A stretch of DNA of 59,062 bases, counting the filler, from Sluysia triapertura (lineage: Eukaryota), in the NCBI GenBank assembly GCA_046118255.1. It is 4 parts of 4 records of this genome, joined end to end, with 100 filler letters (N's around TTAATTAATTAA, not from the genome) between each part and the next. Parts side by side here need not be neighbours in the genome. Positions count along the whole stretch, not along the records: positions 47,862 to 59,062 come from JBJNIA010187403.1; 3 more parts are not named here. One strand, written 5' to 3'. Position numbers and translations under genes: made by a program. This document shows, in pieces, positions 47,862 through 59,062 of the stretch (position 1 is the first letter of the stretch; each line of letters starts with the position of its first letter). The notes under the pieces were generated by a model, which was not told where the DNA came from, ran no database searches, and worked only from the letters and a program-made list of their open reading frames with translations.

Positions 47862-48499
47862 AATTATTTTTGTTAAAAGGTTTCACGTATTCTCCTGATT
47901 AGAAAAAATCTTTTGGAAACTTTGAGGGATCTCGAAAAACTTGTGAAATATTGAAAATATTGTGTAACCGCTTAACAAATTTCCATTGCTATTCATAATT
48001 GTTTTAATCTGATCTTGGCCGGACTAAAACAAATTATTTTATTTAATATAATAAAACAAATTATTATTTCTTGATTAAAAATTAATAATTTAACTAATTA
48101 AGTAAAGACAAGTAAAACAATTAATTAAAAGAGCAATAAGCAATTAAAAACAATTAATTAATATTACTTACATTAATTTGATTTAATTTGACATATAAAT
48201 TATTCCAATAACTACAAATTAAAAATTGTAATATAAAATTTATAAAATAAAGTCCGTAATTTATAATAGTTTATAATATGTACAAAGGTAATACAGTTAT
48301 ATATTCGTTATTAATCATAAAGTAATTCGTTATATCACAAGTTGTTAATAACCATAAAATCAATATTCGTTTATTAGTCATAATCATAACACACATAACA
48401 TCCTTTATACTTTACTCTTAGTATCTAGCATCTTACCACTTACAATTAACTTTGGATTATATCTTTTACTATTATTACTATATTTATCATTGAAGAATA

Positions 48500-48690
48500 T
48501 AAATTTTAACTTTTTCTCTAATATTTTTTCTCAAACCATTGTATCAATTCCATTATTCGTTGTGTTCTTTTAATAGTATTTTCTACATTACGAATTTAAA
48601 TTGATTACCAATTGAAAATTATCGGCATTCATATGGTATTTATGTTGCAACCCAGGTTTATTTGATAAATACATGTGGACGAAATATATC
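48500..48690 (-). mobile_element. Degenerate LINE RT fragment related to 25082-25300
   Basis: Nucleotide similarity (AAACCATT.TATCAATTC...TGTTCTTT.AATAGTATT.TCT) to the 25.1-kb RT fragment. Confidence 0.5.
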
Positions 48691-50485
48691 GCATTACTTA
48701 ATGAAATATTTTATTAAATTATTTTATTGTATTAAATGAACATTCTTTTGAGATCATAAACTGCATCATGATCAGTTTATAAGCAGACAAATGTAACACC
48801 ACCATCAAGACACATTATGAGTGCAACTATTTAATTAAAATGTATTCTTAACACAGCAATTTTTTTCGTACAAAATTTTTACAATTCATGTGAAATTGTT
48901 TTTTAATATTCATTGTATTTGATTCATACCTATAATTATTTAAAAGTAACAAAGCATTACGGAAGTTTTAATAATACAAATTAATAATAATAAAACCCGT
49001 ATTACTTTTTTTTAATCGTTATTTCATTAAAATAGAAATGAAATAATCTAATGCTAACAAACACAAACCAATCCGTAACTATTAAAAGCTTCGCACGAAG
49101 GATTAAATTCACCCAACCCTATAATAAATTATACTATACGGCCTGTATATTTAAGCCATACTATCAAGATAATACTTTTTATTTCTTTAACACAGAAAGA
49201 AATCGGTCACATGTCGCATATTATATAATAGAATATCAGATTTACAAATTATTGAAATTACAATTGTCTTAACCAAATTTTCATTTATAATTGAAGCTAT
49301 TATTTCTCAAAATTAATTACCTTTACTAGTTATTCATCTGAGTTAAATAAATTGTTGGTAAATATATTTACTATACCACATATTAATAAAAAACTTAATT
49401 ACATTATGCATTAAAATTTCTCTTGCCATTAAACTCAAAAATTCAGTACTTCAACAAAATTTGCCTTTCCAAAACTTCTATCAATGTTCTTACTAAATTC
49501 CACTTTATTGACTGATTATATAAAGATAATTTCGTAACACTTACAACATACCATAAATTAAAAAATTATCAGTTACATCTTATGGGGAAACAATTATTTA
49601 AAATCAAATGAATAAGAGAATTGAATTTATTTACATAATTTTTCAAATAAAGTAATAAAAAGCATGATGTTGTAATTACGTTTTTGTAGGTGAATTCATA
49701 TGATGTGTCGACATGCGTAATTAAATTTCTGAACTGTGTAATTTTTAAACGAACTTAACTTTAAATGCATGTAGAATGTCTCAAAATCATATTTTACATT
49801 TATTTAAGTTTTTTAATATAAAAAACTTCACTGAAAATATAAAATGTTCTTTGTAATTTTTCGTTGTCCTAGTAATTTTGAATGTGGTACTTTCACACTT
49901 TTGAGATCTAACGTATATTAAAATTTGACTCTGTTGGATTCACAGTAAATATGGATCATAAAATTACTCAATTGTCCCATGATTTGATAACTTTCACAAA
50001 AAACGTAAAAATTAAAAGCATTACATTTTGAGTACATTTTTACATTTTAAAAAAATGTTGAAATCTATACCATTTATTATTTGAAAGCACAATAGTAAAA
50101 TGAATAACCATAACAAAAATGGAGTTTAATAATAAATATCAGAATGATAACTTCAATAAATCTCAAAGTTTATGACAATCAACAATAAATATAGCTATAA
50201 ACAATAAATAAAATTAAAAATTCAGTTAACTACTAACTATGCAATTACTATTAAAATAAATCAAACATTTTACAATTTTAACTTTTTATCATTGAAATAA
50301 TAATTTTCTTGTGTCAGCATTTTTTAGAATTTGAAATCGCTTTTCTGATCTTTGTTGAATTTGGTAGCAATTGAATCATTAGACGTTTTGATTTATTTTC
50401 ATTTGATTTCGATGGATATTGTAAGGTTGACTTGATGATTACAGTCGGATTTGTTCCAAGTGTAAATTGTGAGACGATGAATTAG

Positions 50486-50640
50486 TTAAACTATTGGTGG
50501 TATGAATGTCGTAATATGGAACTTCTATAGATACCATATTAATATTGACTCGATAATTGAAATCTTTCAATCATTACCTTTCTCAATTCTGCCATTAAAT
50601 TTTGTTTTATGCACCTAACATCGATTCTTACACACATTTG
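50486..50640 (-). CDS. Candidate terminal exons, possibly of CAP-H
   Basis: ttttag acceptor, 63-nt phase-0 exon 50640-50578 (QMCVRIDVRCIKQNLMAELRK), 53-nt GTAATG..TAG intron, then KFHITTFIPPIV*; phase-compatible with the CAP-H donor at 53688. Confidence 0.3.
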
Positions 50641-53600
50641 CTAAAAGTAATAATAATATGAACAACGATAATAATAATAATAAAAAGAAAGGGTGTGAAA
50701 CTTCATGCTCTGATGGAAAAGGTGGACTCAGCGGATTGACAGAAGTAATTATATAATAAATTATTGTAATTTAAGTACATTATATATTATTCAAGTTACA
50801 AAATATTATACTTTATTTAAGTGATTAAATGTTGGTGTAATATGTGGTGAATGTTTGTGATTGTCTGTGTTAGGGGTTTATGAATGAGCTGAACACTACA
50901 ATGATAAATGTACAGTGATGTTTTGAGAGAAAGTAATGTTAAGCTGTTAGGTTTTGATGGTAACAGATCGTGAATTTAAAATGTTTTGAAGATGTCTATT
51001 AGTTAATTTCGAATGTGATTGTGATTGAATTGTTATGAAGTGTCGAATAAAATATTTTTGGTGAGTCTCTTGCTGTAAATTGACGGTATTGAATGTGATT
51101 GTGGTTTGAATGTTGTAAGGTTATAGATTTGAAATGTTTTGGAAAAATTGGATGTTGATTTTGGTGGATGTGAAAAGGAATAAGATATAAGAACGGTTGT
51201 GACGAGATTTACAAAGTTGTTGTGTGGTGTTGAAACGAATATGATTTTAATTACTTTTGAGTTAAATTGTAAATTTAAAAATGTGAGTTGTAGATTTTGG
51301 GGATAAATGTTATATTGAGGAAGACTTATGTAACAGAATGTTTTTAATGAATTTCTAAAAATGTTTAATATAAATTTTTAATAAAATTGGTTAAGGTAAT
51401 AGGTTGGTCACCACATTTACAAATATAAAATCAAATGAAAATAAATTTTTCTAATTTTGTTATATTAATAGTATCATTTATTCATTGTTAATTTAAAATA
51501 AAATTATTATTTTACGTTATTTTCTTTTAAATAAATAGAGATTGGGGTTGGAGCTACGGAATAAATTTGAAATCATATAAGTAAAGTTCATGAAATAAAG
51601 ATTTTAAGAATAGAGTAATTGCTGCTTAATATAAAGTTATAAATTGAAATAAAAGCCTCCTAAAATATGATAGAAGTAAAGAATATTTACACAAGATTAA
51701 TCAAGACATAGTAAAATAATAACAAGAGTTTGAAAGAATTATTTAATAGATAAGCACTGGGTCGAGCATTAGAATTCACACTTCCAGATAAGATAAATAT
51801 AATATAATATATAGATATCACTTGTAAAATAAATTAGTAAAGAAAGTTTACGTTAAAAATAATAATAATAGAATTCGCACACAAAACTTTAGAGTTAAAC
51901 CACATAAAGTATATATAGCTAATTATAAAGCAGAATTGTTGCCTGATATAAAAGAGTTCATTTAAGCACATTCAAATATTTATAACACGTAACTATATAA
52001 TTTTTACCATTTTTATTCGCGACGAAACTACGAGAAAACCAGAATTAAGCATTTTTACTAATAATATAAATGCATTTAAAATGAAAGAGAATTTTATCGA
52101 TACCGAAAGCATAAAAAACCAGAATTAAAGATTTTTAAAAGTAACAGTTTAATTAATGCACAAATAAAAATTTTTATCGATTATGCAACACTGAAAGTAA
52201 AAGTATAGTATTATACTGACAGTGAAAGTGAAATTAAATACTTCAGATTATCAAAAGGACAGAATAAAGTAGTCTATCAGAAATAAATTTTTATCCTAGG
52301 AAGGAAATTGAGGTCTGTAGAGAACTCGTCATACGGTGTTCATCATAATTCATCACATAATATTCACTATAACTCATCTCATATAGTTCATCACAACACA
52401 TCGCTTAAAAACGATACACACATACACAAACTATTAAACGAACTACTAAACTCTTTCAAAAGTAAACACGACCATCATATCTAACAAAGTATTTCATTTT
52501 TTGTTTATTCATTTAATGTTGATATTATATTTTTATTCTCATAAGTTAATACATCCTGTATTTTATTGTTCGTTTAAAATGTTTTTATTGTTAGTTAATT
52601 CGGGCCTTAAGCCCTTTTTGATGAATTTAAACGTTAAATTAATTAGTTATTTTAGTTTAATAGTTTTTAAATTTTTAAAACCCAAAAAATATAATGTTAA
52701 GAAAAAAATTAAATCTTTAAGAAGGATCAAATGGTCCATGACGCTCACAACACTTTAAGGTCATTAAAAGTTACATGCTTAAATCTTGACGACTGCACCT
52801 TATTCCTACCTCAAGCTAATTTAAAGCTATATAATGCGAGAATCTATTATAGAAGATTCCACTTTTGAAATCTTAAAATTTCGTAGCTCCTTCAATATCT
52901 TTTCTGTATAATGTGTCTTAGATTCTTATTTACATCAGTTCCCTTAGCTTCGCCTTTCCTGTTATATCAACTTACTAAAATCCGACTTAACTTCACAGAC
53001 AAATAACTACAATACCCACGACTTTTTCCCAATACAAGTTAGATAACATTTAATATGTAAAGGATTGAGAATGGTATTGATTCGGGTTAGACATTGGTAA
53101 AAGCTATTGTTTAACGGATGGTGGTTATTTGGTTAACGGGTTGTAGTTTTTATTTGGTTAAAGTTTCGTAGGAGACAAAAGTTCGCAATTACATATTATC
53201 GCACATACAATATTTTATATTTTATATTATATTTTAATATTGATAAATAATTATAACTAATTATAATTATAAATAATTATACCACACTAAAAATATCATT
53301 TAATTTAAAATTAAAATTTTGGTAATAAGTATGGGTTGAAACAGTTTAAACTGCTTTGTTTAAACAACCTTCGAATTCATTATTTGTGTTTGTATATTTT
53401 CACTTCTATACCTCGACGAAGGACCTATAAGAACTCTGACTCCTAATAAGTTAGATTTATCTCTATACAAAAAAGAATAACGCAAATAGGATTAAGCTAA
53501 CATTCTTAAAAATAAATTCCAACATTTAACAAATAAAAACCTAACACTATCTTAATATGAAAAAAATTCTCATTTTTTCTTACACATTCTTACTGAAGAA

Positions 53601-53688
53601 GTTATATTTATATGATTTCATTTTTCACTCTCATATTAAGTATTAAAAGTTTATTCTTTAATTATTTACAAATCAACTAAAATATTAC

Positions 53689-54057
53689 CTGTTCATTAGA
53701 CAGAAATAAAAGGCACGTAAGAACAATTGGAACTGATAGATCTTTCGACATTTCTTTGGATATTCGACTATCAACTACCTGCAGCATTTTACTAAGATTG
53801 GTAGATTTCGATTTAACTAGAATTTCATTTTGCTCATTTTGACACTTTAAAAAATCATTAATCTCCATTAATTCAATAGATTCTCTCAAATGATTGAAAA
53901 TTTCCTGTTTCAAACGTTTAACATTAATCCGTTTTGCTGTTTTTGCATAATTGATATGAATTTTTTCTACTTGCTTCACGGAAGGTATCTGTACTCCATC
54001 AATACATTGATCATGCCCAATATCATCGTCCACAACTGGATTCAAATCATTCTCAAA
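53689..54057 (-). CDS. NCAPH: Condensin I kleisin subunit CAP-H (barren/Cnd2), C-terminal internal exon
   Basis: VEKIHINYAKTAKRINVKRLKQEIF and DLSVPIVLTCLLFLSNEQ match CAP-H [20 protein letters not shown] and LSIPLAFACLLHLANEK; catttag acceptor and CAG|GTAATA donor, both phase 0. Confidence 0.92.
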
Positions 54058-55400
54058 CTAAATGTAACAAAGTATAATTTAAATAACAATTTTAAATAAA
54101 AAAATTGAATTTAAAATAATAATTTTATTATCGAGATATTAATTTCATTTCTAGAGTAATCAAATATAAAAATTTGTAAAATACAATTTTTTTTAAATAT
54201 TTTAAATGTTTTACAGTTCTACCCAATAATAAATTCTATAAACGTTAATTTTGATGACTCAAATAATTTAAATTTTTTGAAATAAATGTTTTTAATTTCA
54301 TAAATATCCATAAGTTTGTTATATTTTGCTATACATATGAAAAATATTAGATTATTAAAAGACAGAACTCTATCATTCTAATGGAGCAAAGTTTAGAATA
54401 ACGTTTTATTATTGATAAGGTAAGAATTCAAGTTCATTTGCAGAAACTTTAACCAAATCAACATTTTTGAGGTTACTGAAATTTCGTAAAAATACTCACA
54501 TTCGTGTATTTTCGTGTACATTATTTTATTTCGTGAAGTTTCAAAGACCAATAACTTGTTGATTTAATCTAATATTTCGAAGTGAAAAAAGAATCATTCA
54601 AAATCGAAACTTTAGTTAACAAAGTATAAAAGTATAGTTATACATAAACCCTACAATCAAAACTCAATTAACGCAACAATAATATTTTAATACACTTTCT
54701 CACATTGATAATTTTTTCAATAATACGCATACTTACATTTTACTTCATTACGCATAGGTTAACAAATTTCTTTCATTTGATGTATAAAAACAATCATATC
54801 ATTATTATTGTCATATAGTTATTGTTTTCACTATTCTATTTTCGTTAATTGACTTATTGTTATAACTTTCTCATTGTATTTCTATGATGCGTCAATATGA
54901 ATTTCTCGTTATATATCCTTATAGTTGAATTCAATTTATCTCAATTAATTGCTAATTAAAAATATTATTGTGTCAAAGGAAGTAGCTCTAATTTTATTCT
55001 ACCTCATTCATATTTAAATCATTTTATTCGATTGTAACTATGTAAAAAACAAAGCTGCTGTATACAGTTCATATACAAAAGTCACAAAATGTCTTAGTAG
55101 ATAATCAAATAAGAAGTTGGTTTGAAATTATTGTAAAGAATTATTTAGCAAACTGAGAAGATTATTGAGAATGCTTTAAGCATTTCATTGAAATAATAAA
55201 AAGTTAAAAATTAAATATATTATTATTATTATTATTAAAATATTATTTATTTAATTTTATACTTTAATAATTTATACTTATTTAATTTTAGACTTTAAAT
55301 TAATAAACTCATTAAAATTAATTCTGCTTCTGTCAACTTTGACAGATCATTTGGTACAAAATTAGTTTTCACAAACATAAATTAATTCATACCTTTCACT

Positions 55401-56507
55401 ATGTCTCAATCTTTGTCTGCTTATTTTAAAAGCTGCATGGTGACAGACAATGATTTTTATTCGTAGTTTAATACTATCTTCGTTTCTAATTTTATTGGCC
55501 AACCAATGAGATTATACTTTTTAGTATAATCTTAACTATTGGAGTATAGAATAATAATTAGTTTAAAATCACAATTTAATGTCAACAACACCAAAAACAC
55601 AAGTTATACTTAATAAAAGTTAAAAAATTTTATCAGCTCACAAAAATTTTTCAGAATTAATTTTTTAGACTAAATTTTATTATATTATAAAACGAGTTCT
55701 TACGTTTTACAAAAAATTTAAAGATTTGAACAGTTGCGACGACAATTATGATAATGAAGATTATTATAACGATGATGATCAAACTCATTCGTACTCAGAC
55801 TACAGTACGCTTGATGATTTATCAAATCATAATAGATTTAGAAAGTATTGTAATGATCAATTAGAAAGAAAGCATATAACTAGTATTAAGAGCAGCTATA
55901 CAGAATTACAAGAGACTATTCGAATTTTGAAAGTTAATGAAGTGTCCCCTTCAATTATTTTACAAAATGCTGTCGAAAATATAGATGAGTTAAGCGAAAC
56001 ATATAAACATGTTGAATTAAAAAATAAGCGTCGTGTAATGAGCAAGATTTACAATTTTCGTTAAGCCGGCATATTTCGTTACCAACAACTAACTCTGATA
56101 TTTGTAAAGCAAAGATGTTACCAGATGTCTCTAGTCTCAATAACACTCACAGTGTCGTTCTGAACAAGTCACGCACTAACCAGTCAATTTTTAATGTAAC
56201 ACAACCATCTAATGCTTCGATCAGACCAATTAGACCGTGCAATGTTACAAGTGTTGATAATGCAAAGCACCATATAATACAAGACTATGATATATCATGT
56301 TTCTTCAAATCAGCATTATGTCCATATGGAATTTCAATAACAGGGGAAAGCATCAATAATAGAAAATCTTGTCCATATGCACATGGATTTCTCGAATTGG
56401 TTTCAATTCCTGGATTATATGCAATTAGTCTTCCTCAGTCACAGTTTAAAGAAAACGAATTTGATGTAACATCTCAGCAGTACTGTTACAACAAAAAACT
56501 TTTATAA
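55401..56507 (+). CDS. Max-like bHLH plus Unkempt-type CCCH zinc-finger protein (model 251 aa)
   Basis: Exons 55401-55462, 55734-56034 and 56115-56507 join in frame. LERKHITSIKSSYTELQETIRILKVNEVSPSIILQNAVENIDEL resembles Max [77 protein letters not shown] resembles a CCCH finger. Confidence 0.7.
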
Positions 56508-57509
56508 AGTAATTTTTAATACTATGAATCGCTTACCATTTTTTATTCAAGATGATTATAATTTTGTAATTTTATTTAGAAAAATCAATGGTAATTTCAT
56601 CGTAGCATATTCTTGTGTGAATGAACATTCTTGGCCATTAACTTTTCATGTTATTAAAGAAAATTTTAATATTATAATTTTCGTTTACATATTAATAAAC
56701 TTTTTAGATGTTATTTTTTGTTCAAATAAATTAAATAATTTAATTATTTTAATAATACTAGTTAAAATTTTAAAAAAAAAATTAATTATAATTATCCAAA
56801 CCTACACAAATGGCGTTTGGATAAATTACGCCCAAAATATGATTTCCAGAAGTCACTTTACAAGCAAATTTATAGTAAAAATGAAAAGACCATCAGGAAC
56901 TAATGATTCCATCAAAAATGATAATATGTTAAAAGTCAAACCCAAATCAAACAAAATAAATTAATCTCCAAACATTTACATTAACTTTAGGTATCAAATA
57001 AACAACTTCAGTATTTAGAATTATCTCAAGTTTGAAATGAATCAAATTAAAACTAATCGCAATGATTATTCATTCATTCTTTAAATCTTTTGAATCTTTT
57101 TCAATTTTTAAATCTAAAATTCATTTAATTTAAATTTCATAACATTCATTCATTGTTTTAAATTAAAATTTATTTAATTTAAATCTATCTAAAATAAAAT
57201 TAAAATCATTATCATTAAGATTATAATGCTTTATATCAATTTAAAATGAGATTTAATAGAGTTAATTGAATTTAAAATTTAATAATAAATAGTAACTAGT
57301 TTTAAATTGAAATTAAAGAAATTGTCATTTTAAAATGAGATTCTATAAAAACAATGTAACATTAATTTTTAAGAACATAAAGATCATCCTAATATGAGAG
57401 TTAAAATTATGTTAAGATTGAATAAAATTAGTATACATTTTTTTCGATTAGAATTAATTTAAATTAAAGATTAGGCGAATTATAATCGAGAAAAATCATC
57501 TTAAAATAG

Positions 57510-57648
57510 AATAAATATAAACCATATACAATTAAAATTTAATAACAATTTCGAGCAAAAAATAATAATCATTGCGCAATAAATATAAACCATATACAAT
57601 TAAAATTTAATAACAATTTCGAGCAAAAAATAATAATCATTGCGCAAT
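57510..57648. repeat. Perfect 68-bp tandem duplication
   Basis: AATAAATATAAACCATATACAATT...CATTGCGC repeated twice exactly. Confidence 0.92.
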
Positions 57649-58574
57649 GTTTACCTATAATTATTATTAACCTATAATAATTATTATTATTTACTAATAA
57701 GAATTAACTGTGTAATTATTATTTATAATTTATAATTATATATGAAATTTATTAGTCTAATATTTACCATGTATATAAAATTTATTGATGGAATTTGTAT
57801 AAAACTTGATCTATCACATAAATTTATTAAATCATTGTAGAATTTATTATGTATATAAAATTTATTGATTACTATATGCATGGAATTTTGACTTTTATTA
57901 TGTGTAATTGTGTATGAAATTTTATATAAAATTAAAATTAAAGAATCAGAAGAGTGTTACAGTTCATTACGTGTTGTCGTCATTCGAGTTTTCTCGGAAT
58001 GAAACAGACATGAACTCACTATGCACACCTCCTGTTCAACATATCAAATGGTTTATGGAACAATTCCTTGTTTAATTTTAAATCTAATTTTAAATTTTGG
58101 AACATAAATGTTCATCGTACGACTTATTTTATTTTTATAATAAACAGTTCTCCGGTTTAAATAAGAATAGATAGGTTTATAAAACAAATCAACAAAGATG
58201 AACGTCCTCTAATAACTAACAATATCAAATAAAAGTTCTTCTTATTAACAGACCTATTAAGATCTACAATAAAAAATGATTCACAACAAACATAATATAA
58301 TTACCTCTAAAAATGGCCTTATGACTGCATAAATTATTTATTTTTATACATATAATCAATGCGTAAAGTTAAAGAAAATATAGTGTAATCATAAAATCAA
58401 TAAAACTTTGTTATAATTGAGAAGATCACTGTATCATGTATAATTCACATTCCATATTTTGAAAGTTACAAATATTGATTTTATAATTTTGAAAGGCCAA
58501 AGTTTATGTTGTATTTCCTAAAATTTGTGAAATGTAAAAACATTTCCAATCATAAACTAATTTCAATTTGTACA

Positions 58575-58950
58575 ATGGCAAGCAGTGGGAGCATGTTTAT
58601 ATTATTGAAGCGATTAGTGACGTGGGTCTTGCATCCCATGAAATATATAATAGACATATATAATTGAGTTCACCCATACTTTAGAAAGGTATGGTTTAGT
58701 AGTTGACAATGTTTCTTATAACACTGACAATGAAAAGTTTGAAGCTAAGTTTAATATTCAGTAAATCTTAAGATTGAGGCCTTAATCTGGTATGTCTAAT
58801 CCTATTGAAAATCTTTGAATTAAAATAGAACAAGCTTTAAAAGCGAAACGAATTCTTGTTTATTGAGGTCCTCAAGAGTTATCAATTATCGAATGCAGAA
58901 AAATGTTCGAGAAAATAGGCCAATTATGGTGGCCAACCTATTTACATAAT
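58575..58950 (+). mobile_element. Decayed Tc1-type transposase C-terminus
   Basis: SNPIENL*IKIEQALK resembles SPDLNPIENLW; the remnant ends in ANYGG, like the Tc1 terminal A.GG.T.Y. Confidence 0.65.
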
Positions 58951-59062
58951 AATCATTCTCTACAAATCACATTCAAAAATAACATCACAAAACAACATTA
59001 AATTAAATCAACACATTATACATAAAACCATACTCTTAAACATTTTGATACTCCCATATTTA

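What the first reader, a model, noticed from the sequence alone, without database searches (positions are those of the whole stretch)
55401..56507. Max-like bHLH fused to an Unkempt-type CCCH zinc finger
Seen: two adjacent ORFs join in frame through a GTAATG...CTAAC...AAG intron (56035-56114). A short upstream exon (MSQSLSAYFKSCMVTDNDFYS) joins in frame, and its TDND recalls the Max N-terminal SDND. From recalled family sequences: the first domain aligns along its length with the Max bHLH. The second, FFKSALC-x9-S-x6-C-x3-HG.LEL followed by LYAI, has the spacing and flanks of Unkempt zinc finger 3 (YYKTGIC-x9-C-x6-C-x3-HG..DLR..VYDI). I know of no described protein combining a Myc/Max-network dimerisation domain with an RNA-binding CCCH finger. 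Inference: a lineage-specific chimera that might link the Myc/Max network to RNA.
Basis: partly seen in the sequence, partly recalled or inferred. Interest (0 to 1): 0.85.

Follow-up and report, generated by a model that had tools for sequence, protein, structure and literature searches.

The report
Broken copy of bHLH–CCCH gene family
This is one damaged copy of a repeated, apparently lineage-restricted gene; other copies appear to encode a Myc/Max-like helix-loop-helix domain and one CCCH zinc finger in a single unbroken reading frame, so the proposed intron is probably coding sequence hit by a one-base frameshift.

Summary
The two ORFs exist (55726-56064 and 56115-56507), and an 80-nt GT..AG removal (56035-56114) would join them in frame. 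That join is no better than chance: 19 GT..AG pairs restore the frame. The two frames overlap at 56028-56061, and the "intron" has exon-like GC (0.34, against 0.15-0.21 in the flanks).

Contigs of the one public run holding this DNA show a multi-copy unit (about 55663-56815) at 10-25 times the flank depth, with at least 10 sequence variants.
- Two variant contigs carry one extra A behind 56040 or 56042. This fuses both ORFs into one continuous frame.
- The upstream "mini-exon" lies in a segment that the joints indicate most other copies lack.
- ORF A has no in-frame ATG.

Domain calls are weak singly but agree:
- Pfam gives HLH and zf-CCCH_UNK below threshold, at noise level here.
- The top 12 PDB hits for the HLH half are all Max or Myc.
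- The only PDB hit for the finger is TIS11d.
- The ESM Atlas points to Max and to CCCH clusters.

No homologue and no RNA data were found. Verdict: the domain combination is plausible and undescribed, but this copy is probably a pseudogene and the intron is unsupported.

The parts
55663..56815 (+). Approximate extent of the multi-copy unit that holds ORF A, ORF B and the start of a third long ORF.
   Evidence: summed contig depth is 130-366 here, against about 14-20 in the flanks. Many contigs are 90-99% alike, and 10 of them carry A at 56002. The ends are only known to the 134-nt bins and from one joint at 55663.
55726..56034 (+). It has an acidic D/N/Y-rich N-terminus followed by a helix-loop-helix. 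The frame is open 55669-56061 and holds no ATG before 56038.
   Evidence: AF2 predicts helices 28-70 and 75-102 with pLDDT up to 93.
55855..55992 (+). bHLH-like core (aa 44-89 of ORF A). Glu47 is kept, Asn43 stands at the His position and Ile51 at the Arg position of the Myc E-box triad.
   Evidence: Pfam HLH, E 0.045, 14 bits. Myc alignment. Top 12 PDB hits are Max or Myc. ESM 'Protein max' at 0.87.
56028..56061 (+). Overlap of frame A and frame B. One extra base here makes a single continuous ORF.
   Evidence: Searches show the overlap. One search shows an A put in behind 56040 (depth 29.1 of 75.6) and behind 56042 (10.5 of 75.6) in other copies.
56035..56114 (+). It is more probably a coding linker read in frame B.
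   Evidence: GC is 0.338, like the exons. Frame B has no stop across it. The acceptor is weak. No RNA data exist.
56115..56507 (+). ORF B: an S/N/T-rich linker, one CCCH-like finger and a 40-aa tail.
   Evidence: AF2 gives no confident model.
56301..56390 (+). CCCH-like finger (aa 63-92 of ORF B), C69-x9-S79-x6-C86-x3-H90.
   Evidence: Pfam zf-CCCH_UNK, E 0.009. The only PDB hit is the TIS11d finger, E 0.88. The ESM hits are CCCH clusters.
56349..56351 (+). Codon AGC (Ser79). A>T at 56349 gives TGC (Cys), which completes the CCCH ligand set.
   Evidence: One search shows the variant at depth 45.6 of 60.9. One search gives the codon effect.
55401..55463 (+). It is probably not part of the gene.
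   Evidence: It joins in frame only through GT 55463 and AG 55733. It lies inside 55300-55662, which 18 other letters replace in contigs of depth 71 and 49 (table 5c).
56470..56961 (+). A third open frame of 164 codons that overlaps the end of ORF B. A one-base loss at 56493 would fuse ORF B to it.
   Evidence: It is longer than any ORF in 200 shuffles. The one-base loss at 56493 is seen in one contig at depth 45.2 of 220.2. GC is 0.18 and Pfam gives only noise hits.

Best explanation
The window holds one degenerate member of a recently amplified, multi-copy gene family.

In at least some other copies the whole stretch from about 55726 to 56507 appears to be a single uninterrupted ORF of about 260 codons. 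It would encode, in order:
- an acidic N-terminus;
- a Myc/Max-like helix-loop-helix without a leucine zipper, keeping only the Glu of the His-Glu-Arg E-box contacts;
- a disordered S/N/T-rich linker of about 100 residues;
- one CCCH zinc finger (C-x9-C-x6-C-x3-H) with a TTP/Unkempt-like lead-in and an AHGxxEL tail.

The window copy has lost one base in 56028-56061, which splits the ORF into two frames. It carries Ser where most of the depth at 56349 codes Cys, at the second zinc ligand. It has no ATG for the first half. It is therefore most likely a pseudogene. The 'intron' is coding sequence, not an intron.

Inferred, not shown: an intact member would dimerise through the HLH and so present two CCCH fingers. 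With its degenerate basic region it would act as a modulatory or altered-specificity HLH partner rather than a classical E-box binder. The finger would contact RNA or another nucleic acid.
For: -: depth is 130-366 across 55744-56815, against about 14 in single-copy flanks, with at least 10 variant contigs.
- one A inserted behind 56040 or 56042 in two contigs, exactly inside the 34-nt frame overlap. This gives one continuous ORF.
- 56349 A>T at depth 45.6 of 60.9 makes Ser79 into Cys.
- no indel is listed inside either ORF, apart from a homopolymer variant 12 nt before the stop.
- the 'intron' GC of 0.338 equals exon GC. Seven of 19 listed substitutions are synonymous, against about 0.19 expected.
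- 19 alternative in-frame GT..AG pairs exist.
- no ATG in frame A.
- Domains.
Against: - About half of the depth spanning 56040 lacks the extra A, so the un-inserted form is not unique to this copy and could be spliced.
- The variant contigs could not be read whole, so I have not seen a complete intact ORF or its start codon.
- The run's type is not on record. I take it for DNA from its even coverage of non-coding flanks.
- Every domain match is below significance taken alone. 3 of 11 control ORFs from this piece also draw Pfam hits at E 0.05 or lower.
- The excess of synonymous changes is not significant (P about 0.07).
- No expression data exist.
Confidence: 0.6

Rival explanations
1. This copy is a functional spliced gene of two or three exons. 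Removal of the 80-nt intron 56035-56114 yields a bHLH-CCCH protein.
For: - GT, CTAAC and AG are in place and the join is phase 0/0.
- About half of the depth at 56040 has no inserted base.
- ORF B starts exactly at the acceptor with an ATG.
Against: - The 80 nt have exon-like GC.
- Frame B is open through the whole interval.
- 19 GT..AG pairs would do the same job.
- The acceptor lacks a pyrimidine tract, unlike the TTTAG before the Cnd2 exon.
- ORF A has no ATG.
- The mini-exon lies in a segment that the other copies appear to lack.
- The second zinc ligand is Ser here.
Confidence: 0.15
2. The whole family is dead DNA. It would be a chimera of a bHLH fragment and a CCCH fragment, joined by retroposition or capture by a mobile element and then amplified, and never a functional protein-coding gene.
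For: - The unit is multi-copy and intronless. Other copies carry internal deletions (joints skipping 93-300 nt).
- An A10 run at 56772-81 and AATAAA at 56694 and 56725 lie near the 3' edge of the unit.
- High-copy repeats lie next door.
- There is no homologue among 1.84 billion representative proteins.
- The bHLH half has more depth than the CCCH half.
Against: - Long open frames are kept in 24% GC DNA.
- No indels are listed inside the ORFs, and there is a mild excess of synonymous changes.
- The zinc ligands are kept in most copies.
- No terminal repeats or target-site duplications could be shown.
Confidence: 0.15
3. Two separate small genes or chance ORFs. The bHLH and CCCH resemblances would be composition-driven noise.
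For: - All profile and pairwise matches are below significance.
- Junk ORFs in this piece draw Pfam hits of similar E-value.
- AF2 fails on ORF B.
Against: - Three different methods name the same family for each half.
- The predicted missing Cys is present in other copies.
- ORF lengths exceed the shuffles.
- The extra base in other copies joins the two ORFs.
Confidence: 0.07

Closest known systems
Max / Myc bHLH (group B bHLH of the Myc/Max/Mxd network)
   Same: - The sequence pattern LERK...IK.S...L, a loop, then ..IL..A...I is shared.
- The loop 'NExxP' resembles that of Myc.
- The best PDB matches are exclusively Max and Myc.
- The nearest ESM cluster is 'Protein max'.
- A helix-loop-helix is predicted.
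   Different: - It falls below the Pfam threshold.
- Asn and Ile replace the His and Arg that read CACGTG.
- No leucine zipper follows helix 2.
- The tail is a long linker plus a CCCH finger.
- It is multi-copy, and no orthologue was found.
TTP/TIS11 (ZFP36) CCCH fingers
   Same: - The lead-in FKSALC resembles YKTELC.
- The C-terminal half, [10 protein letters not shown], resembles C-Q-F-A-H-G-F-H-E-L.
- TIS11d is the only PDB hit.
   Different: - There is a single finger, not a tandem pair.
- The spacing is x9/x6, not x8/x5.
- The window copy has Ser at the second ligand.
Unkempt (six tandem CCCH fingers plus a RING; PMC4358403)
   Same: The only Pfam CCCH model that registers is the UNK-like one (PF25427, E 0.009). 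The longer spacing fits that model.
   Different: - There is one finger and no RING.
- The half is 130 aa rather than a large conserved protein.
- There is no phmmer hit to any Unkempt chain in the PDB.
HLH proteins with defective basic regions (Id/Emc type; from general knowledge)
   Same: It has an HLH with incomplete DNA-contact residues, which suggests a modulatory dimerisation partner.
   Different: The basic region is only partly degenerate (the ERK motif is kept). No sequence kinship to Id was shown.

Membership tests
bHLH (Pfam PF00010) | Profile match at or above the gathering score | tested here: not met
   14 bits against a cut-off of 20.7, E 0.045. Control ORFs reach similar E-values for unrelated families.
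bHLH (Pfam PF00010) | Two amphipathic helices separated by a loop, after a basic stretch | tested here: met
   AF2 predicts helices 28-70 and 75-102, with pLDDT 88-93 in helix 1. The basic stretch RFRK..ERKH is read directly. Fold searches returned only generic helical pairs.
bHLH (Pfam PF00010) | Dimerisation through the HLH | tested here: inconclusive
   The homodimer job gave no verdict (ipSAE 0.01).
Max / Myc (group B bHLH-Zip) | His-Glu-Arg E-box contacts in the basic region | tested here: not met
   The alignment to Myc places Asn43, Glu47 and Ile51 at these positions. Only Glu is kept.
Max / Myc (group B bHLH-Zip) | Leucine zipper continuing from helix 2 | tested here: not met
   Read directly: helix 2 is followed by ...SETYKHVELKNKRR and then an S/N/T-rich linker. 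There is no heptad Leu series.
Max / Myc (group B bHLH-Zip) | Closest sequence relatives are Max or Myc | tested here: met
   The top 12 of 177,635 PDB sequences are Max or Myc, though at E 0.28-0.59 each. The ESM first hit is 'Protein max' at 0.87 with 179 shared features.
CCCH zinc finger | Ligand pattern C-x(4-15)-C-x(4-6)-C-x3-H | tested here: not met
   The window copy has C69-x9-S79-x6-C86-x3-H90. In other copies 56349 A>T (depth 45.6 of 60.9) gives Cys79, so the pattern is met there.
CCCH zinc finger | Profile match at or above the gathering score | tested here: not met
   PF25427 gives 16.3 bits against a cut-off of 31.1. The finger with Cys restored was not searched, because no reference exists for it.
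Unkempt | Six tandem CCCH fingers and a C-terminal RING (PMC4358403) | tested here: not met
   There is one finger and no RING. No PDB hit to Unkempt was found.
Spliceosomal intron at 56035-56114 | GT..AG ends with a branch-site motif | tested here: met
   GTAATG, CTAAC at 56089-93 and AG at 56113-14 are present. However, 19 in-frame GT..AG pairs exist.
Spliceosomal intron at 56035-56114 | Absent from the mature transcript | not testable with these tools
   No RNA run holds this stretch.
Spliceosomal intron at 56035-56114 | Non-coding character (composition, stops in frame) | tested here: not met
   GC is 0.338 against 0.15-0.21 in the non-coding flanks. Frame B is open across it.

The most novel reading that the evidence does not exclude
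Intact, expressed members of this family exist. They would form a previously undescribed protein architecture: a Myc/Max-type HLH dimerisation module coupled to a single TTP/Unkempt-like CCCH finger. The family would have been born and amplified to ten or more copies recently in one AT-rich eukaryotic lineage. That would be a natural case of a transcription-factor dimeriser wired to an RNA-binding finger.
Probability: 0.3. Interest if true: 0.65.

Novelty: new variant of a known kind. Interest (0 to 1): 0.45.

Why it matters
If intact copies are expressed, this would be a new domain combination, an HLH dimeriser plus a CCCH finger, and a young fast-expanding gene family. It would be useful for studying how new regulators arise and amplify.

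For annotation the lesson is practical. In-frame GT..AG pairs between two overlapping frames are expected by chance. The paralogue evidence here points to a frameshifted pseudogene copy rather than a spliced gene.

As it stands, the window copy itself is probably non-functional.

Tried and rejected
Searches for relatives that found nothing:
- Word-indexed protein searches with ORF B, ORF A and the Cnd2 exon found nothing. These are length-limited, so a blank says little.
- Exhaustive phmmer of ORF B against 1.84 billion representatives gave 0 hits.
- Metagenome and viral contig scans found no relative.
- A search for RNA evidence listed only one run, of unrecorded type and with no RNA.
- Papers: no text contains 'bHLH-CCCH' or its variants. 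A broader search gave nothing relevant.

Structure work that was uninformative:
- The AF2 model of ORF B has pLDDT 28.5 and is unusable.
- Foldseek PDB, the ESM-atlas shape search and VIA-align wide on the ORF A model returned only generic helical hairpins and coiled coils.
- Complex prediction on an HLH homodimer gave no verdict. It is not evidence either way.

Other ideas checked and dropped:
- Rfam found nothing on the piece.
- Ciliate genetic code: it does not extend the Cnd2 match or give better ORFs.
- Programmed -1 frameshift: the only slippery run (A AAA AAT, 56019-25) lies before the frame-B stop at 56025-27, so it cannot work (read from the sequence).
- Terminal repeats around the unit: only low-complexity AT-rich matches were found.
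- A second copy within the piece: none.

Left out: any search or fold of the joined exons, of the frame-restored ORF, or of the finger with Cys restored.

Full report
WHAT IS IN THE SEQUENCE

The piece (47862-59062) is 24% GC eukaryotic DNA.
- ORF A is open from 55669 to 56061 (131 codons).
- ORF B's frame is open from 56028 to 56504 (159 codons, with an ATG at 56115).
- In 200 shuffles of the piece the longest ORF had a mean of 88 codons, a 95th percentile of 117 and a maximum of 147. Both ORFs are therefore longer than chance.
- GC rises from 0.15-0.21 in the flanks to 0.29 in ORF A and 0.34 in ORF B.
- GT at 56035, CTAAC at 56089-93 and AG at 56113-14 are present. Removing these 80 nt joins the ORFs in phase 0.

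IS THE INTRON MORE THAN CHANCE? NO

- The two frames overlap by 34 nt (56028-56061), and 19 different GT..AG pairs would restore the frame.
- The 80 nt have GC 0.338, like the exons and unlike any non-coding stretch nearby.
- Frame B has no stop through the whole interval, where chance is about 0.06-0.11. The third frame has five stops.
- The acceptor (GCAAAG) has no pyrimidine tract. The one homology-supported exon in the piece, Cnd2, is preceded by TTTAG.

EVIDENCE FROM OTHER COPIES

No RNA run holds this stretch. The single run that does (X1, Logan contigs) has no recorded type. I take it for DNA because it covers non-coding flanks evenly. I laid it on 53600-57600.

- The flanks have depth of about 14-20. 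One 1992-nt contig there differs by a single letter.
- 55744-56145 has summed depth 322-366 and 56146-56815 has 133-246. Many contigs are 90-99% alike, and 10 of them carry A at 56002.
- The Cnd2 exon next door shows no such variants, so these are paralogues within one genome and not other organisms. The tool warns that summed depth is not a copy number. My reading is at least ten sequence versions.

Three differences in those copies decide the reading.

1. One A is inserted behind 56040 (depth 29.1 of 75.6) or behind 56042 (10.5 of 75.6). Either lies inside the frame overlap and turns ORF A plus ORF B into one continuous ORF with no splicing.
2. 56349 A>T (depth 45.6 of 60.9) changes AGC (Ser79 of ORF B) to TGC (Cys). 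Most of the depth at that site therefore reads C-x9-C-x6-C-x3-H.
3. Contigs of depth 71 and 49 join 55299 to 55663 with 18 other letters in between.

Two further points come from the same data.
- No indel is listed inside either ORF, except a homopolymer variant at 56493, 12 nt before the stop.
- Of the 19 listed substitutions 7 are synonymous, against about 0.19 expected. This hints at constraint but is not significant.

THE START OF THE GENE

Frame A has no ATG before 56038. The mini-ORF (55401-55463) can be joined in frame only through GT 55463 and AG 55733 (62 nt in phase 2, plus 1). Its donor is GTAGTT and its acceptor is A-rich. Because the segment is missing from the other copies, I do not count it as part of the gene. 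I could not see whether other copies have an ATG, for example at the TTG at 55726, because the tool lists only the best-supported differences.

THE DOMAINS

Pfam gives HLH (E 0.045, 14 bits, cut-off 20.7) and zf-CCCH_UNK (E 0.009, 16.3 bits, cut-off 31.1). As a control, 3 of 11 other ORFs from this piece draw unrelated Pfam hits at E 0.05 or lower: Wzz, HOOK_N, DUF7353 and CemA. These E-values alone are therefore noise. What counts is that independent methods agree.

For the HLH half:
- The top 12 of 177,635 PDB sequences are all Max or Myc, at E 0.28-0.59.
- The nearest ESM Atlas cluster is 'Protein max' (0.87, 179 shared features), and all the top families are HLH.
- AF2 predicts two long helices with a break at 71-74.

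For the finger:
- The only PDB hit is the TIS11d/ZFP36L2 finger. [10 protein letters not shown] aligns with CQFAHGFHEL at E 0.88.
- All named ESM hits are CCCH clusters, at 0.79-0.85 and with low recognition.
- The paralogue Cys is at the predicted position.

I put the HLH at about 85% and the CCCH finger (for the family) at about 85%. 'Max-like' is fair, though Myc scores equally. 'Unkempt-type' is too specific. Unkempt has six fingers and a RING (PMC4358403), and no Unkempt chain is hit.

In the Myc alignment, the E-box contacts His, Glu and Arg correspond to Asn43, Glu47 and Ile51. No leucine zipper follows helix 2.

WHAT IT MOST LIKELY IS

This is a deviant, probably dead, copy of a young multi-copy family. 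The intact gene would be one exon of about 260 codons: an acidic N-terminus, then the HLH, then an S/N/T-rich linker, then one CCCH finger.

Shown: the multi-copy state, the frame-fusing base in other copies, the Cys in other copies, and the lack of an ATG here.

Inferred: that intact copies are functional, that they dimerise through the HLH, that the degenerate basic region makes them modulators rather than E-box binders, and that the finger binds RNA.

How the family was amplified is open. Tandem duplication, retroposition and capture by a mobile element are all possible. An A10 run (56772-81) and AATAAA motifs near the 3' edge hint at retroposition, but such runs are common in this DNA. No terminal repeats were found.

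CONTEXT

A Cnd2 (condensin subunit 2) C-terminal exon lies on the minus strand at 53680-54057 (Pfam E 6e-17; yeast Brn1 E 0.002). The rest of that gene is not visible within the piece. The family copy therefore sits either in a long Cnd2 intron, antisense to it, or beside a gene fragment. Immediately downstream lies a very high-copy repeat.

NOVELTY

No homologue of ORF B exists among 1.84 billion representative proteins or in metagenome and viral contigs. No paper text names a bHLH-CCCH protein. The architecture appears undescribed, but it rests on weak domain matches, unseen full-length copies and no expression data. The organism could not be identified.

LEFT OUT

None of these has a stored reference.

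Noticed in passing
window 53680-54057 (-): A C-terminal exon of condensin subunit 2 (Cnd2/Brn1/CAP-H), Pfam E 6e-17, profile positions 649-747 of 764. It is single-copy by depth. No upstream exons are visible on the minus strand up to the end of the piece, so there is either an intron longer than 5 kb or an isolated gene fragment.
   Followed up: partly
window 57084-57485: A very high-copy repeat. Summed contig depth is 12,000-49,000 against about 14 for single-copy flanks. GC is 0.147, and there are many joints and loose ends. It is likely a satellite or a small mobile element.
   Followed up: no
window 57510-57645: A perfect tandem duplication of a 68-nt unit (two copies, 100% identical).
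   Followed up: no
window 56470-56961 (+): A 164-codon open frame in 18% GC DNA, longer than any ORF in 200 shuffles. A one-base loss in the A6 run at 56493, seen in one contig, would fuse ORF B to it. Pfam gives only noise hits. The multi-copy depth ends near 56815, inside this frame.
   Followed up: partly
window 55300-55662: A 363-nt segment that 18 other letters replace in other copies. It is bounded by a perfect 13-nt inverted repeat (AAAATTAATTCTG at 55314-26 and its complement at 55652-64) and by TTTTAGACT at 55286 and 55663. It may be a small inserted element.
   Followed up: partly
window 50362-51861: A strong excess of G over C on the + strand (GC skew up to 0.67), with a 114-codon open frame on the minus strand (51036-51377) that has no Pfam match.
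   Followed up: partly
window 55744-56815: The depth of the bHLH half (322-366) is about twice that of the CCCH half (133-246). Joints skip 93-300 nt inside the unit. Some copies are therefore truncated or internally deleted.
   Followed up: no
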